Source of the DNA: Isurus oxyrinchus
Taxonomy: Eukaryota
Length of the DNA: 64,000 bases
Assembly (NCBI GenBank): GCA_026770705.1
Contig: JANJGN010000001.1
Span: forward strand, 128,588,001-128,652,000
Reading direction: 5' to 3'
Both the position numbers and the translations under genes were made by a program. The notes under the pieces are model-generated. The model was not told the origin of the DNA. It worked only from the letters and a program-made list of their open reading frames with translations, and made no database searches. Shown here in pieces: positions 3,161-10,420 of the stretch (position 1 is the first letter of the stretch; the number at the start of each line of letters is the position of its first letter).

Positions 3161-6100
3161 GTTTTCTTTTTTTAAAAAAAAAGTAACTTCACAAATGAAA
3201 ATCATAATGGAATATTTGAACTTGTGTTAAGTACATTCTTGCTCCTGGTCCACTGATTGCCGATGCAGCCTCCAGCTGAAGCTAGATATAACTTGCAGTT
3301 TTTTTTTCAATGTTGTTTAAAGAAAGCCACATCAAGATTAAAAATGAAAATGCATCAAGATGTTTTTTTGCAATTTGCATATACTGGATTTGCAGCATCT
3401 AACAATTAGATGCAGATTATATTCTTTTCACAAGAAAGATATAGATAGCCTTTATACTTGACAATAAATTATTTTTTATACTTTTTTAATTTTTTTAAAA
3501 AAACAAAAAATTCAGGAAAAAAATGAAACATAGAACATATATTTTTCAGAGGTTATTTTACAAACAACATGAAACTAAATTCACTGAATGTCAGAAAGCT
3601 GTGATATAAATAATAAAAGTACTGCCATGATATTCACAGAGCGACATTGGAGAGTTTTCACAGGAACGCTCATTAATAATAACAGTTACAAGACAAATAA
3701 AGATCGCCAATACCGAAGCAAGTTTGCTTTGGTTCCGTACATAGCTCTATCTCTCTCTCTCCCCACACTCGCACAAAAAATCAAAGTAAAGGAGAACCAA
3801 AAAAAAAATGCAGACAAATTGATGCGAACATGAAGCATTGTTTGAATGCAAAGTCTCACCTTACTCTTGTAACATAGCTGCAGCAGGTTTATGATTTGTA
3901 AACCAATCTGTCGCAAAAGACCAATCAACAATAATAAGATGCAATTGGATCAGAATACATTTTCTTTCTATATAAGTCTGCTCCCATTTCCCACCCACTC
4001 CCCACTCCCCCCACCCCCCCACCCAACCTCCCCCCCCCCCACCCCCCCAATACCCTGCAACCTTTTATATTTCCCTCACTGCTTTTTGTTCTAAGTCAGA
4101 TCGAGTGATTGTTTTAAAGGGGCCTTTTACCCTGTCTAACTCAAAACGGTCTGTCTGTTTAAACACCACCTGTTTAAAACAGTCTGTCCACAGTATCAGC
4201 ACTTTTATATGTCCTGGTGCCCTAACTGAAAATATCACTGTGCGGTATGTGTGCCTCTAAATAATATAGAATGTAACTAACCAGTAGATACAATATTTTA
4301 AGGATATTATGTTTTCTTTAAATAAGTAAATCAGTTATTAAGAAATATTAGAATACTGCTGAAAACTGTAGGGGTGTAGTCAAAAGGTGTAAACAGTGTT
4401 TGTCTGAACCACCAGCTGATTACTGCTCATTGTTTACATCTCATGCACATTTAAAAAGGACAATTATAACGTCACATGCATGTTTTCCTGGTAGATTAGG
4501 ACATATACCATGCTCATTGTATGCCGTTACAGTTAATACTTATGGCAATCATTTATACCTCAGTGGTGCTTCAACATTAGCAGATTGCAAACAGCGTAAA
4601 CGTGTGATGAGAAGCACCTCAACAAAACTGTCAACTAATTTCACAGCAGACTGTCGCACCCCACCCCAGCCCCCCAAAAAAACGGTATTTGAATGTACCC
4701 CTACTGTTTTCAGTTTGTGTAACCTGTTGCCTGTGTAGGACCTCAAAGGGGAAAAGTCTGTTTCATAATGTCAGCTAAGAAAGGAAGAGAATGGATTCAG
4801 CAATGAAAGAAATTAAAATCATTTTCATCTCTCCGGAAGCTGTTGGAACTCTTGCTCGACTGGGACGGTCAGTTTCCTGTTAAGTGCTGGGCATTTTGTT
4901 TGCCCAGTTTGGGGTTTAGGACAAATTGGAAATGAGAGAATCAGATTCCTTATATCAATTGTCCATTTTAACCAATTTCTGACACCTCTTTCCTCAGTGT
5001 AACCCCCCCCTCAAGAACCAAATAATCTCTGCCGCTTGCAAAATGCATCAAATATGTCATCAGCTGAAGTTTCAAAAGGTTTTTTTTTATCACCCTTGAT
5101 GTGATCAGATTTATTAGAAGTGGGGATCAGGAATGAAAAGAATGTTTAGTTCTACCAGATGCTTGAAATAGCTGTCAGATATGTCCACCCTGCTCATTAC
5201 AAAACTGCAGAAATTCCATCGGAGTCACAAGAGAGTTGTTAACATTGCACAATCCTTCTGTATTATTAACATGCACACACAATGATGTAAAAAGACACAG
5301 CATTCAAAGTAATGAAAACACAGGGTTGACAACCTGAAGTGAGAAGACACTTGAAGTTTCTGACACATCACTGTTGTAGTGACAGAATGAACTAGCGCTG
5401 ATTATAAACATTCTATCGCAATTTTGAATAATTCAAATTTTCGGCATGTTCAAAGAACCGGTTTGATCACTTTTGACAGCCATATGACCCTCTGGGTTTC
5501 CTTGATTTTAACAGTAGAACTTACGATGTCTTAAAAAGCAGAGGGTTAGGATTGAGAGTTCAGATGGCACTCAGCTTTTTTTTATTGCGAAAGAGGAACT
5601 GAAATTGTTGCAGCTACATTGATTGGATTGATAATGAAGTACACGATTAAACAGAAAAAAAAGTTTATTTGAAAGAGGCTTTAAATGCGTCTGTTTCACA
5701 AACACAGGAAGATATCAGAAACTTTGTCCTTTTGCTGAATGCAGGTTCAATGCTGTGTATTTTGAATATGTATGGACTGTAATCTGCATCTCCAACAGTT
5801 TTAATTGTTGTCACCCCAAAGGATTGATGCTGCCGCATCCCATCATCATTTCAATACCTGTGTCAGTTCAATGAAAGTAAAAGTTATATGACACAGAAGC
5901 CTGCTTTCACCGCAGCTGATGCCACTAATTAAGATGATGGCAACAAGAATGTATAACAGGCTGTTCCAAATTGTCAGAAACCATTACAGGATCCCAACAG
6001 AATCCTTCCATCAAAGGTTCTCGGCCTCCTCCGGTCTGCCTGCCATCAGCCAGTATCCTATGTCCTGTGATTTGCAAAGGAAAGACACTGAGTCAAGGCG

Positions 6101-7127
6101 AGTGACTCCCTCACCTTTCCTTACCAAGACCTACCAATTTAGTTCCAAGCAGTGACTCCTCCAACTGTGTAGCTGAAAATTGACCCAAAACTCCTCCAAG
6201 TGAGGCAGAAAGATGCAGATGGGAGCTATACTGAGTCTAATGCCTGATGCCTGGTTCCAAGGGGGAACACAATGTTGGTTTCTCAAAGAGGTTGTAGTAT
6301 TTACAGGGTACAAAATGGCCCTACAAAAATGCCAAGAGAACTGATATTGCTCTTTTAAAGCAAACAGTTTCATTGAACTAATTTGACCAAACTCAGTGAA
6401 TAACCTTACTGTTCAAACACCCATATGTAAAACACACCCTTTCGAAGCATCCTGAGAAAGCTTCACCTTCAAAATCAGCTAATCATGAAGTAGTAACGTG
6501 CTTGTTACTGATTTTCTTGATAACAGCGCTCACAGATTCCAGTGTCCCTCGTGTTAAGCCCTACTTTTGGTCTCTTTTTATAGGAAGATTTGTTTAATCT
6601 TATAAACCATCAGGTCCCATCAGAAGCCACAGCAGTGAAACATTACTGAACAAGCAGATCAAAGTGATACACCTCCTTCATTCCCACATGCGTGTGGGTT
6701 TCTTTTTCCCACCTCCTGTTGTCGACAATGGACTCGGAACTCTGCCGGAATCCAAACTCCATCCCCCAGGAAAAATACCCTAATTTCTTGGACATTCTAA
6801 AGGAAATTCTTTTTCTTATCAGAAGGTTTGGTAGCAGGTACCACGGCAACCGATGTACTAACTCCGTTTTCAGCATAAAGTAACATAAAGGCACCATTGA
6901 TATCTTTCTGTGTTGAAATACTGTAAAAACGCTACATATGGCACATTAGTATTGTGAATGCTAACATTTTTTTTTACATATATATATTTAAATCTATAAA
7001 AACTTGTAGACTTTCTACTAGCTGCAAGGTTCTTCTGCTAAAATAAAATAAAATGTTTAATTTAAAGTAAAGTATCCGGAGTACTTCATTATATAAAATA
7101 AAGTTTTACTGGTGCATCTATGTGTTT
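3130..7127 (-). other. NRG1: Probable long NRG1 3'UTR (~4 kb)
   Basis: AU-rich and free of recognisable transposons, unlike both flanks. Ends near ATTAAA (3155-3160) followed by a GU/U-rich element. Confidence 0.6.
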
Positions 7128-7767
7128 TTAGACAGCAATTGGGTCCTGATTAGCAATTACATTGGACAGCCTGACTTGCAACTCTTCCTGTGTCGAGTAC
7201 CTATTGGTGGAGTTAGTCCTGTTTTCAGCCAATCGGTATGCAGGGGCTGATTCTACACTCGTTGCCATGGGGTTCTGTATGCTCAGAAAGGGTGTCTCTT
7301 CCCCTATTCGTTCATCTTCAGTTTCACTGTCAGAGCTACTGCTCTCCGAGCTTGGATTACCCTCGCTCTCCATTCTGTGTGAAATGTGGCCATTAGCCTT
7401 TGTTCTTTTCCCTCTCCTGTTGCTGGTCCCTTTCTTGGGGGACTCGAGCGTTGGCTCATACTCTTGCGTGGTCTCATATTCATCGTCCTCGACCACCCTT
7501 AGCGGGCTGGCCGGGATGCTGCCACTGTCCTTGGCGGAGTTGCGGTACTGCTTGTAAGGGTCTTGCCTCTTCTCCCGCTGTCGAGGTGGGGTCACCAGAA
7601 GCAGAGGCCTCTCCTCCTCGATTAAAGGGCTTATGGCCACTGATGGCATGGATATAGTCAGGCTAGAGACTGGCGGCGACACCTCTGAATCAGGCGACTT
7701 TGGGGACATTGGGGTTCTGAAGTCCACTGGCGACATTCTGGCTGGAGTGGTCATGGCAGAGACGAAC
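7128..7767 (-). CDS. NRG1: NRG1 a-tail terminal coding exon: (R)FVSAMTTPARMSPVDF...YETTQEYEP...RLSNVIANQDPIAV*
   Basis: ORF-track 208-aa ORF extended to acceptor ttacag. The C-terminus ANQDPIAV is diagnostic of the NRG1 a-tail. Confidence 0.98.
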
Positions 7768-7897
7768 CTGTAATGTAATTAACAGCACCAATGAGGGTGA
7801 CAGCAAAAAAAAAGACATTCCTTCACAGATAGAGTCCACTGTTCCTTTACAGGAGATAAGATCCATTCTAGTGGTGAACATAAGACATACAGTCAAA

Positions 7898-8340
7898 GGC
7901 CTGAATTTTCATGGAGTTGCAGAGCCATTTAAAGAAGCAGCCAGGACCTGATTCTGGGTTTGCCACCCCCATTCCTGGCGCCCCCAATTTTTGCTGGCAG
8001 GGTGGGAGGGGTGGCCGTGGGGGAAGAGAGTTCCTGCACCCTGCTCCCCCAACCTGGCTGGCTCCATTGCAGGAGTAGGCATCTGCTAGCTCCCCACAAT
8101 TTTGACAGAGTGGGACCAGCTTCTACATGACTCATGGTTCATGGCTCCTCAGAGTGGAGTCGTGAACCATAGTCTGGATTCGGGAACCTTTTGAAAGGAA
8201 TGTTTAAAAAGTCTTACCCGTGACCCCCATGCCCCTTCCATGTCTCCCATGCATCCTCCATTCCAAATCATGCCAAGCCATGCCCCCCACCCACCTCCCA
8301 TATCACCTTATAGGCCCCATGCCAATGCATACATGAAATT
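7898..8340. mobile_element. Truncated GC-rich TIR element
   Basis: Starts ggcctgaattttc like the 11886 element. No clear second TIR. Confidence 0.4.
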
Positions 8341-8913
8341 GCTCAGGAAAGAAACAAATCTTCCTTTGAAAAACAAAACTTCTGCTCTTACAACTGTATA
8401 AAAGTGTCAGTCAGACAAAACATTAAAGTATCAATAACAGGCTTCAAACAGTTCACACCGCTTAATCTCGAGCAAATGAACATTTGGACTTTAACAAAAG
8501 AGATCACAGAGTTGGATTATTATAACCACTTAAAGTAGGCAATCAAACAACAACAGTTCTCTCCAGTTGTCAAACCAGTATCCCCTAGTGAGATAATGCT
8601 TTTATGAGTCTGGGTTCTCAACTTAGCACACATAATAAGGAGTGGTGTAAGAACTGGATGGTTCTCTCCTCAAAACTCCCCTCAATCTTTTTTAATCCAA
8701 GGAGAATAAGCTTTTCCAAGCTTTTCCCAACCTAACCTTGTAGATAACATCCTTCATCCTTGGAACCATTCGAGTTATCTCCTCCGCACCCTCTTAAAGT
8801 CACTCACATCCTTCCTAAAATCCAAATTGTTGGATCAGAAATCAAGCCTTCAGTTAGTTCTTTCTTGATCAGTTAACAGCTTTTGGGAATGAGTGGCACT
8901 GCAAGTTGGCTTA

Positions 8914-9013
8914 TCATCCTTTTGAATTTGGGTTCACTGGTGCATCCATGTTTCCTTGGACAGCAATTGAATCCTGATTAGCAACAACATTGGTCAACTT
9001 AGGAGAGGTTTTT
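8914..9013 (-). CDS. NRG1: Candidate alternative terminal (b-position) exon: (R)KTSPKLTNVVANQDSIAVQGNMDAPVNPNSKG*
   Basis: Acceptor ctgtctcatctgttcttacag is in the correct phase (2) for the 9672 donor. 32 codons follow, then TGA TAA. Paralogous to the a-tail C-terminus. Confidence 0.6.
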
Positions 9014-9264
9014 CTGTAAGAACAGATGAGACAGCTCAGACTGTGTTCAAACGGAATGAAAGCCTTTGCAACTCATTTCATGATTATGGAGTGAATTTTC
9101 AGTCCAATTTCTGATATGTGCAACAGATCTTTAATTTAGTGCCTCATAATTGAACTCAGAGAGGTCAGAGGGCTTGCTAGTGTGAAACGTGTTACACTGG
9201 GCTTTGTGCTCTTCTGAGATTGCAGAAGAGTACATGGAGAATTTGGGTGCAATTATATCTCTCA

Positions 9265-9430
9265 CATATACCCAAGGGACAGTTGAACATCTCATCCAGA
9301 AAACAGCACCTCCTTCAGCAATGCACTGAAGAAGTGTCAGCCTGGAAAATGAGTACAAACCTCTGGAATAATGCTTCAACCCACGATCTGTGACTTAGAG
9401 ACAAGTGACCTACCAACTGAGCCAAGGCTA
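9265..9430 (-). mobile_element. Deu-domain SINE 5' fragment
   Basis: catctcatccagaaaacagcacctcc...ccaactgagccaaggct. Confidence 0.55.
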
Positions 9431-9449
9431 GCACATCTCAGAACTGCAC

Positions 9450-9645
9450 AGGTTACAGCCGTGCCCTAAGTTCCCACAGTTACAGTCAGACCTCTGCCTG
9501 CAGTCAGGGCTATGACCTCACTCCCTACAGTCTAAGCTGTGCCCTCCGTTTCTCTTTACAGTCAAACTTCTCCTTACAGTCAAAGCTTTGCCCTCTGTTC
9601 CCGTTACACCTGTGCATTCAGTTCCTATAGCTACAGTAAACTCTA
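9450..9645. repeat. Degenerate tandem repeat with recurrent tacagtca / gtgccct units
   Basis: About 8 recurrences of (t)acagt at 18-30 nt spacing. Confidence 0.55.
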
Positions 9646-9671
9646 TGTATATAAATAGCCGCAGGCCCTAC

Positions 9672-9875
9672 CTTTCACTATGCGGTGAATCTCGGAGAGA
9701 GTCCGGAGTGTCTCTTGAGTTCCTCACACAGATAAGCATCTCTCGCCGACCTGCCACACCATTGAGTCGACCTCGGTGATTGATTGGACTGGTGTGCCTG
9801 CTGGTTTCTATTGATGACGTTACAAGCACAGAAGGGCTATCTGAGATGACACTTTCTGTTTGGCCTGTACTCCAA
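9672..9875 (-). CDS. NRG1: NRG1 cytoplasmic exon 3: WSTGQTESVISDSPSVLVTSSIETSRHTSPINHRGRLNG...DSLRDSPHSE(R)
   Basis: 204 nt, acceptor gaccacag, donor gtaggg. Ends in the conserved RDSPHSER. Confidence 0.96.
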
Positions 9876-10074
9876 CTGTGGTCAACACAAAGAGAAACAT
9901 CTTTAAATCCCTTTGTCAGACTATCCAACATCACACTGCCAACATCATTGTTTGCACAGAGGGAGATCTTCAGCTACTTCCCAGTTGCAATTGGCACCAG
10001 ACATTTATTTTTCAGTGAATAAATGTCCTTATTGAGACAGTGTTGTGCCAGAAGTAAGGGGATTCAGCAATTTT

Positions 10075-10420
10075 TCTTTATTTTTTTCATGGGATGTAGG
10101 TGTCACTGACAAGTCCAGCATTTGTTGCTCAACCCTAATTGCTCTTGAACAGAGTGGCTTGTTAGGCCATTTCAGAGGGCAGTTAGGAATCAACCACATT
10201 GCTGTGGGTCTGGAGTCATATATAGGCCACACCAGATAAGGATGGCAGATTTCCTTCCCCTTAAGGACATTAGTGAACCAGATGGGATTTCTTTTTTTAC
10301 AATTGACTAGATTTATTAATTGAATTTAAATTCCACCAGCTGCCGTGGTGGGATTTGAACCCACTTGAGCCTCTGGGTTACTAGCCCATGGGCATTACCA
10401 CTGTGCCACCATCTCCCCCA
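10075..10420 (-). mobile_element. tRNA-derived shark SINE (family with core ccatctggttcactaatgtcc...ggaaggaaatctg)
   Basis: Homologous to 40095-40490 (-), 17160-17470 (+), 49660-50010 (+) and 14110-14230 (+). Confidence 0.75.

What the first reader, a model, noticed from the sequence alone, without database searches (positions are those of the whole stretch)
8911..9035. Alternative NRG1 tail exon apparently built from a duplicate of the gene's own C-terminus, with the stop codon erased
Seen: minus-strand 9000-8936 aligns without gaps to 7172-7108 (last 14 codons, stop codon and first UTR bases of the a-tail) at 53/65 identities by hand count. RLSNVIANQDPIAV* has become KLTNVVANQDSIAV-Q because TAA changed to CAA. 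The former 3'UTR (..catagatgcaccagt) is now translated as GNMDAPVNPNSKG before TGA TAA. A strong acceptor (ctgtctcatctgttcttacag at 9014) puts it exactly in phase with the RDSPHSE|R donor. Three of the seven coding-part substitutions are synonymous and three more are conservative. Known: mammalian NRG1 has an alternative b-tail exon at this position, but as I recall its sequence is unrelated. Inference: a lineage-specific short-tail isoform that drops about 200 aa of the intracellular domain, keeps the ANQD motif, and buries the terminal Val implicated in trafficking.
Basis: partly seen in the sequence, partly recalled or inferred. Interest (0 to 1): 0.85.

Follow-up and report, generated by a model that had tools for sequence, protein, structure and literature searches.

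The report
Exon-like self-copy in NRG1 intron
A short copy of the very end of the neuregulin-1 gene sits in the gene's last intron and looks like an alternative final exon, but no RNA or other-species data could be had to show that it is used.

Summary
On the minus strand, 9000-8936 matches 7172-7108 at 53 of 65 bases without gaps. The next best 65-mer match in the window is 33 of 65. BLAST extends the match to 83 nt at 76% identity, E 6.5e-15, and it is the only similarity between this intron and the a-tail exon plus 3'UTR. The parent is the last exon of an NRG1-type gene (Pfam Neuregulin, E 3e-70). In the copy the TAA stop has become CAA, so 13 codons of former 3'UTR are read before TGA TAA.

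The copy is single-copy and also present in independent low-coverage DNA contigs. An acceptor in the top 2-3% of the window's AGs lies 13 nt upstream, in phase with the c3 donor. Only 1.4% of window positions have this arrangement. The four amino-acid changes are conservative (P 0.03-0.09). The synonymous share and within-species variation show no constraint.

Expression and conservation in other species could not be tested.

Verdict: the duplicate is real, the exon anatomy is better than chance, and its use is unproven.

The parts
9672..9875 (-). NRG1 cytoplasmic exon c3 (…RDSPHSE, ending with the first two bases AG of an Arg codon). Acceptor AG at 9877-9876, donor GT at 9671-9670.
   Evidence: Read. 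tblastn of gecko, amphibian-like and mammalian NRG1 proteins aligns here at 51-63% identity.
9014..9034 (-). Candidate 3' splice site: pyrimidine tract ctgtctcatctgttcttac plus AG (9015-9014).
   Evidence: 14 of 18 pyrimidines at -20..-3, C at -3, no AG in the last 12 nt. This is the top 3% (2.1% by the strict criteria) of 4302 minus-strand AGs, and stronger on this measure than the real a-tail acceptor at 11/18.
8911..9013 (-). Candidate alternative tail exon, coding part: one base completing Arg, then 32 codons KTSPKLTNVVANQDSIAVQGNMDAPVNPNSKG, then TGA (8916-8914) and TAA (8913-8911).
   Evidence: No Pfam match for the 32 aa.
8914..9000 (-). The duplicated block itself: 9000-8959 comes from the last 14 a-tail codons, 8958-8956 is the former stop (TAA to CAA), and 8955-8914 comes from the first bases of the a-tail 3'UTR.
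   Evidence: 53/65 ungapped. 83 nt at 76%. The last 22 nt (8935-8914) match only about 50% in A+T-rich sequence and are the least certain part.
7086..7172 (-). Parental segment: last 14 codons of the a-tail exon, stop TAA (7130-7128) and first 42 nt of the 3'UTR.
7128..7767 (-). a-tail exon, coding part (212 full codons 7766-7131 plus stop). Acceptor AG at 7769-7768.
   Evidence: Pfam PF02158 Neuregulin intracellular region, E 3e-70. 72% identical to tetrapod NRG1 a-tail ORFs, and ends in NQDPIAV as 30 of 69 retrieved relatives do.
8802..8807 (-). Possible 5' splice site GTGAGT (GAT|GTGAGT). It would make a 206-nt cassette exon 9013-8808.
   Evidence: Read. Sequence only, not tested.
8691..8696 (-). 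Possible poly(A) signal ATTAAA about 220 nt after the stop, followed by a G/U-rich stretch.
   Evidence: Such hexamers occur about once per 600 nt in this stretch (6 between 5500 and 9100), so it is weak evidence.

Best explanation
About 85 bases from the 3' end of the NRG1 a-tail exon (14 codons, the stop and the start of the 3'UTR) were copied into the intron 1.8 kb upstream, between exon c3 and the a-tail exon. The copy lost its stop (TAA to CAA). It lies 13 nt behind a strong 3' splice site that is in phase with the c3 donor. The most likely reading is that it serves as an alternative last coding exon. Splicing c3 to 9013 would replace the 212-residue a-tail by a 32-residue tail, KTSPKLTNVVANQDSIAVQGNMDAPVNPNSKG. 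The juxtamembrane part c1-c3 would be kept. The ANQD-x-IAV motif would become internal rather than C-terminal. The transcript would end at a downstream poly(A) site, possibly ATTAAA at 8696. Shown: the duplication, the stop loss, the open frame, the splice-site anatomy and phase, single-copy status, and presence in a second set of individuals. Inferred: that the site is spliced, where the transcript ends, and any effect on the protein.
For: The duplicate is far beyond chance. The acceptor is in the top 2-3% of 4302 AGs. Only 879 of 63800 minus-strand positions (1.4%) have an equally strong, in-phase acceptor within 40 nt upstream with the frame open. There is no indel over 83 nt at 24% divergence. 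All four replacements are on the copy's side, because the parent keeps the vertebrate consensus R, S, I, P. They are conservative, with mean BLOSUM62 +1.25 against a null of -0.4 to 0; P is 0.03-0.09 depending on transition bias. The detectable homology (9000-8914) lies almost exactly inside the proposed coding exon (9013-8914), and nothing else in the 1.9-kb intron resembles the a-tail exon or its UTR. Mammalian NRG1 uses an alternative tail exon spliced to the same SPHSER donor: 9 of 127 retrieved proteins with that junction carry the b-tail. 'Alternate a or b cytoplasmic tails' appears in passages of PMC11360300. Read depth over the copy equals that of its neighbours (about 5), so it is not part of a repeat family.
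Against: There is no RNA evidence. The six holders of the stretch are low-coverage DNA whose contigs run through the introns. The one RNA-labelled run laid (X9, 155 million letters) held nothing of this gene, not even the a-tail exon. No protein carrying this tail was seen in any search, but no shark NRG1 isoform surfaced at all, so that is a blank and not a negative. Three synonymous of seven changes fits neutrality (P 0.22-0.42). An open frame through the old stop is expected in 30% of neutral simulations. Within-species divergence is not reduced: there is 1 difference (Met to Val, 8949) in the 103-nt coding part, against 19 in 1305 nt of surrounding intron. The thresholds of the acceptor test were set at the observed values, so 1.4% is somewhat optimistic. 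The finding was also picked because it looks like an exon.
Confidence: 0.45

Rival explanations
1. Dead duplicate. A small intragenic duplication landed by chance behind a pyrimidine-rich stretch and is decaying neutrally. It is not spliced at any meaningful level, and the open frame and tidy substitutions are luck.
For: Nothing from RNA or other species supports use. The synonymous share is neutral. Stop loss with an open frame is expected in 30% of neutral runs. Pairwise dN/dS near 0.44 is what one constrained and one free copy give (inference). The nearly invariant Pro of NQDPIAV is changed to Ser in the copy. A non-synonymous variant segregates in the copy. Intronic pseudo-exons are common (established knowledge, recalled).
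Against: The in-phase strong acceptor next to the block occurs at only 1.4% of positions. The replacements are conservative (P 0.03-0.09). There is no indel in 83 nt at 24% divergence. The homology is confined to the would-be coding part.
Confidence: 0.3
2. Cassette (poison) exon. The acceptor at 9014 is paired with the GTGAGT donor at 8807, so a 206-nt exon is inserted between c3 and the a-tail exon. Its stop at 8916 would then lie 108 nt before the last exon junction. The transcript would be a target of nonsense-mediated decay, and inclusion would lower a-tail NRG1 output rather than make a stable short-tail protein.
For: The acceptor is strong. A donor with a perfect +1..+6 GTGAGT follows at a typical exon length. 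The only poly(A) hexamer nearby is the weaker ATTAAA, and such hexamers are frequent here. NMD-sensitive NRG1 transcripts are reported in human monocytes (passage of PMC11360300).
Against: The donor has T instead of G at -1. There are no RNA data. The conservative replacements would not be expected if only the stop mattered.
Confidence: 0.15

Closest known systems
Mammalian NRG1 b-tail exon (alternative cytoplasmic tail)
   Same: It has the same genomic slot, between exon c3 and the a-tail exon. It uses the same SPHSE|R donor and phase. It has the same consequence, a short tail of 32 aa here against 39 aa that replaces the roughly 210-residue a-tail ('alternate a or b cytoplasmic tails' in passages of PMC11360300).
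   Different: There is no sequence relation. The b-tail found in 9 retrieved mammalian proteins (HNLIAELRR…) has no tblastn match anywhere in the window, and the shark tail derives from the a-tail's own end. The b-tail is a documented transcript isoform, whereas this one has no RNA support yet.
Alternative exons born by tandem exon duplication (mutually exclusive homologous exons)
   Same: The new alternative exon is homologous to a neighbouring exon of the same gene, and the two would be used alternatively (abstracts of PMC9013439 and PMC9741552 in the listing).
   Different: Only the last 14 codons plus stop and UTR start were copied, not a whole exon with its splice sites. The acceptor is not homologous to the a-tail acceptor. 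The products differ by about 180 residues rather than being swaps of equal length. Part of the new coding sequence was 3'UTR.
Stop-loss C-terminal extension of the NRG1 a-tail
   Same: One retrieved predicted protein, P0064 (215 aa), also reads past …QDPIAV into 11 further residues. It is the only one of 188 held proteins with that motif internal.
   Different: In P0064 it appears to be the a-tail exon itself. Its organism and reliability are unknown and its DNA was not seen. Here the parent exon keeps its stop and only the intronic copy lost it.
Poison (NMD-coupled) cassette exons
   Same: An intronic exon with an in-frame stop lies more than 50 nt upstream of the last junction, if the 8807 donor is used (the NMD rule is recalled).
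   Different: Poison exons are usually highly conserved and are defined by RNA evidence. Neither could be tested here.

Membership tests
[quoted passage not shown] | Neuregulin intracellular region domain in the last exon | tested here: met
   PF02158, E 3e-70, 237.8 bits against a cut-off of 25.
[quoted passage not shown] | Exon order EGF - TM - c1 - c2 - c3 - a-tail, and a C-terminus …NQDPIAV (NRG1-type rather than the …KQDSAPL-type ends seen in more distant hits) | tested here: met
   tblastn of five NRG1 proteins places the EGF exons near 43.7 and 36.0 kb, TM at 22.6 kb, c1 at 20.1 kb, c2 at 14.8 kb, c3 at 9.9 kb and the a-tail at 7.8 kb, all on the minus strand. 30 of 69 relatives end in NQDPIAV.
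NRG1 alternative cytoplasmic tail exon (b-tail class) | Lies between c3 and the a-tail exon and is spliced in phase to the SPHSE|R donor | tested here: met
   Position and phase were read from the sequence. The acceptor is strong. Splicing itself was not observed.
NRG1 alternative cytoplasmic tail exon (b-tail class) | Sequence homology to the mammalian b-tail | tested here: not met
   The b-tail of P0117 has no tblastn match in the window at E up to 1. The 32-aa tail is instead homologous to the a-tail end (P0015 residues 347-360 against 9000-8959).
NRG1 alternative cytoplasmic tail exon (b-tail class) | Present in mature transcripts | not testable with these tools
   No RNA run holding the gene was offered. 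Read laying and the look-up of sequencing runs are capped at one call each.
Tandem-exon-duplication-derived alternative exon | Significant sequence similarity to an adjacent exon of the same gene | tested here: met
   83 nt, 76%, E 6.5e-15.
Tandem-exon-duplication-derived alternative exon | Whole exon, including splice sites, duplicated, giving an isoform of like length | tested here: not met
   Homology covers only 8914-9000. No similarity lies upstream of 9000 or to the other 600 nt of the a-tail exon. The tail would be 32 aa against 212 aa.
Poison cassette exon | Both splice sites used, with a premature stop more than 50-55 nt before the last junction | not testable with these tools
   A donor-like GTGAGT lies at 8807-8802, and the stop at 8916 is 108 nt upstream of it. 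There are no RNA data.

The most novel reading that the evidence does not exclude
The block is a selected 'self-derived' NRG1 tail shared among sharks, rays or both. A partial copy of the terminal exon recruited a new acceptor and turned former 3'UTR into coding sequence. It yields a short intracellular domain in which the otherwise invariant C-terminal …NQDPIAV signal is kept but masked by a 14-residue cap. That would be a splice-controlled switch of whatever the free C-terminus does, such as sorting, partner binding or processing.
Probability: 0.2. Interest if true: 0.6.

Novelty: new variant of a known kind. Interest (0 to 1): 0.4.

Why it matters
NRG1 signalling depends strongly on which cytoplasmic tail a proform carries. 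The short tails are known from mammals, and their origin is obscure. If this exon is used, it would be a clean and datable example of three things. First, a new alternative tail arising from a partial copy of the gene's own last exon. Second, 3'UTR sequence being recruited into coding sequence through loss of a stop. Third, a short-tail NRG1 isoform arising independently at the same intron in cartilaginous fish and in mammals. It would also give a natural construct in which the conserved C-terminal motif is present but no longer terminal. If it is not used, it is an ordinary small intragenic duplicate.

Tried and rejected
RNA test. The look-up of sequencing runs on 8600-9100 listed 14 runs: six holders (share 0.60, three data sets filed twice) and eight small runs guessed to be RNA that held none of the words. 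Read laying on 5200-10200 with X1, X2, X3 and X9 showed that X1-X3 are low-coverage DNA, with contigs continuous through the introns and about 1.4% different from the window. X9 touched only a high-copy repeat at 10081-10198. So there was no test of expression.

Other species. Four searches were made:
- The search for homologous proteins with the a-tail exon gave 24 hits. The best were tetrapod ORFs at 72%, plus one 149-aa EukProt model at 91% (P0008).
- The search of protein representatives gave 49 hits and no shark-specific full-length protein.
- The search for homologous proteins with gecko P0015, region 32-186, gave 469 hits. Only the best 120 were listed, all tetrapods, so any shark isoform lies below the listing.
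- The c3 ORF from its first ATG (87 aa) gave no candidates.

I weighed using a cyclostome-like or divergent fish query to lift sharks into the listed 120. A local score comparison placed the window's exons about 122nd among the 144-169 proteins held, so I dropped that idea.

The 32-aa tail itself was searched only against Pfam (no match).

I considered fetching tetrapod and fish contigs around the a-tail exon, to see whether a similar copy exists elsewhere.

I considered and did not run a metagenome scan for host contamination. A hit would most likely be the same species or unrelated vertebrate DNA.

Rejected readings:
- Assembly artefact: independent contigs span the copy.
- Member of a repeat family: depth equals that of the neighbours, and there is no third copy in the window.
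- Homologue of the mammalian b-tail.
- Larger decayed duplication of the whole a-tail exon: there is no further similarity.

Literature searches that gave nothing useful: (0 papers each). Supplementary files were not opened, and no claim here depends on them.

Full report
WHAT IS THERE. The minus strand of the window carries the 3' half of an NRG1-type gene. tblastn with five retrieved NRG1 proteins places the following exons:
- the EGF exons near 43.7 and 36.0 kb;
- the transmembrane exon at 22645-22541;
- c1 near 20.1 kb;
- c2 at about 14788-14651;
- c3 at 9875-9672;
- the a-tail exon at 7767-7128.

The a-tail exon translation (212 aa) matches Pfam PF02158, 'Neuregulin intracellular region', at E 3e-70. 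It is 72% identical to tetrapod a-tail ORFs. It ends in NQDPIAV, as 30 of the 69 relatives held at that point do. I did not verify it. The closest database protein is a 149-aa EukProt model at 91% identity (P0008).

THE OBSERVATION. Minus strand 9000-8936 aligns without gaps to 7172-7108 at 53 of 65 bases. All other placements of that 65-mer on either strand reach at most 33 of 65 (mean 16.7, sd 3.6). The repeat finder and blastn extend the match to 83 nt at 76% (8996-8914 against 7168-7086; E 6.5e-15). A 24-nt core pattern occurs exactly twice in the window, with none expected.

Codon by codon, the parent RLSNVIANQDPIAV-stop has become KLTNVVANQDSIAV-Q. There are three synonymous changes, four replacements (R>K, S>T, I>V, P>S), and TAA has become CAA. 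The former 3'UTR is then read as GNMDAPVNPNSKG up to TGA TAA (8916-8911). The last 22 nt of the block match only about half their bases in A+T-rich sequence and are the least secure part.

IT IS REAL DNA AND SINGLE-COPY. Three independent low-coverage DNA data sets, labelled as the same organism, have contigs that run straight through the region (X3 8164-10113, X1 8292-9597, X2 8866-9615). They differ from the window at about 1.4% of sites (19 of 1305 in the X1 contig). Depth over 8874-9040 is 4.8-6.0, like its neighbours. By contrast, 8039-8205 (87-170) and 10043-10200 (over 22000) are repeats.

In those contigs the frame, the acceptor and the stops of the copy are unchanged. One difference falls in the coding part: 8949, which turns ATG into GTG (Met to Val). 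Two more fall just after the stops: 8909, and a 1-nt deletion at 8881. One difference in 103 nt is what the intronic rate predicts, so there is no sign of constraint at this shallow depth.

EXTENT OF THE DUPLICATION. A sensitive blastn of the whole c3 to a-tail intron (9671-7770) against the a-tail exon and 2.5 kb of 3' sequence finds only this block. Every other hit has E of 0.013 or more and is 24 nt or shorter. So either only about 85 nt were copied, or only these have stayed recognisable. The recognisable part (9000-8914) sits almost exactly within the proposed coding exon (9013-8914).

EXON ANATOMY. Exon c3 ends …CAT AGT GAA AG | gtaggg (last base 9672). The a-tail exon begins cag | G TTC GTC at 7767, and the copy is preceded by ctgtctcatctgttcttacag | A AAA ACC at 9013. 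Both complete the same split Arg codon.

The candidate acceptor has 14 of 18 pyrimidines at -20..-3, C at -3, and no upstream AG within 12 nt. That ranks in the top 3% of the 4302 AG dinucleotides on this strand (2.1% with all three criteria). It is stronger on this simple measure than the genuine a-tail acceptor, which has 11 of 18.

As a null, I asked at how many minus-strand positions an equally good acceptor lies within 40 nt upstream, in the required phase, with the frame open. The answer is 879 of 63800, or 1.4%. The thresholds were set at the observed values, so the true chance is somewhat higher, but it remains small.

Downstream there is a donor-like GAT|GTGAGT at 8807 and an ATTAAA at 8696-8691 followed by G/U-rich sequence. 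Such hexamers occur six times between 5500 and 9100, so the ATTAAA adds little.

IS THE COPY UNDER SELECTION? The evidence is mixed.
- Three synonymous of seven coding changes is not more than neutrality gives (P 0.22-0.42 for expected synonymous fractions of 0.24-0.33).
- An open frame through the old stop arises in 30% of neutral simulations with 8 substitutions in 45 nt.
- A pairwise dN/dS near 0.44 is what one free copy and one constrained copy would show (my inference).
- On the other side, all four replacements are on the copy's side, because the parent keeps the residues shared by other vertebrates. They are conservative: mean BLOSUM62 is +1.25 against a null mean of -0.4 to 0. P falls from 0.09 to 0.03 as the assumed transition bias goes from 8 to 1 (0.026 in the whole-segment simulation).
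- There is no indel over 83 nt at 24% divergence.
Together with the acceptor, this makes chance a poor explanation of the whole picture, but none of it proves use.

EXPRESSION AND CONSERVATION COULD NOT BE TESTED. The run search returned no holder on record as RNA. The one RNA-guessed run I laid (155 million letters) held nothing of the gene, not even the a-tail exon.

No shark NRG1 isoform surfaced in the protein searches:
- The a-tail query sees only proteins of 117-373 aa.
- The full-length-range query returned 469 hits, of which only the best 120 were listed, all tetrapods.
- The c3 ORF found no candidate.
- The 50% representatives hold no shark-specific entry.

The claims 'lineage-specific' and 'expressed' therefore stay open.

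COMPARISON WITH KNOWN TAILS. Among the 188 proteins held, 127 contain the SPHS[ED]R junction. Of these, 117 continue directly into the a-tail. Nine mammalian proteins continue into the 39-residue b-tail (HNLIAELRR…). One lizard isoform continues into a 12-residue end.

The b-tail has no match in the window. So the shark candidate occupies the same slot and phase as the mammalian b-tail exon but is unrelated to it. Passages of PMC11360300 speak of 'alternate a or b cytoplasmic tails' and of a further 3' end in exon c3. PMC3692042 (passages) calls the a-tail isoforms the most abundant.

Alternative exons born from tandem exon duplication are a known class (abstracts of PMC9013439 and PMC9741552 in the listing). 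This case departs from that class because only the exon's last 14 codons plus non-coding sequence were copied, the acceptor is new, and the products differ greatly in length.

'Neuregulin' plus 'C-terminal valine' gave 0 papers, so I treat it as recall.

VERDICT. The duplication, the stop loss and the in-phase strong acceptor are facts. My estimates are:
- 0.45 that the block is used as an alternative last coding exon giving a 32-residue tail;
- 0.15 that it is a cassette exon whose stop would trigger decay (donor at 8807);
- 0.30 that it is an unused, decaying copy.
It is a new variant of known kinds (alternative NRG1 tails; duplication-derived alternative exons) and of moderate interest. It is easily settled by junction reads and by the orthologous intron of other cartilaginous fishes.

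Noticed in passing
window 10043-10200 and 8039-8205: These are interspersed repeats in the NRG1 introns. Summed contig depth is above 22000 at 10043-10200 and 87-170 at 8039-8205, against about 5 elsewhere. The RNA-guessed run X9 also matches the first one. The family was not identified.
   Followed up: no
window 9480-9595: A short direct repeat lies in the c3-to-copy intron (40 nt, 78%, spacing 76; family D2), within a stretch of reiterated 'gactgta' units visible.
   Followed up: no
protein P0064 (215 aa): This is a predicted fish-like NRG1 a-tail fragment that reads through …QDPIAV into 11 more residues. It is the only one of 188 held proteins with that motif internal. It may be a natural stop loss or an error. 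Its DNA was not seen.
   Followed up: partly
protein P0008 (149 aa, EukProt) against window about 7200: This is the closest database relative of the a-tail exon (91% identity). It stops at …RTNSTN, where the window has AATAG|GTACTC. It also starts at an internal Met of the exon. This suggests an ab initio model that split the gene around this region. The upstream partner model, which might end in the copy, could not be retrieved.
   Followed up: no
window 5200-10200: The DNA runs labelled as the same organism differ from the window at about 1.4% of intronic sites, but at only 1 listed site (7427) within the 640-nt a-tail coding part. That is a sizeable within-label divergence, pointing to a different population or a close relative.
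   Followed up: no
window 9672-7767 (whole intron): No counterpart of the mammalian b-tail exon is detectable in this intron or anywhere in the window by tblastn.
   Followed up: yes
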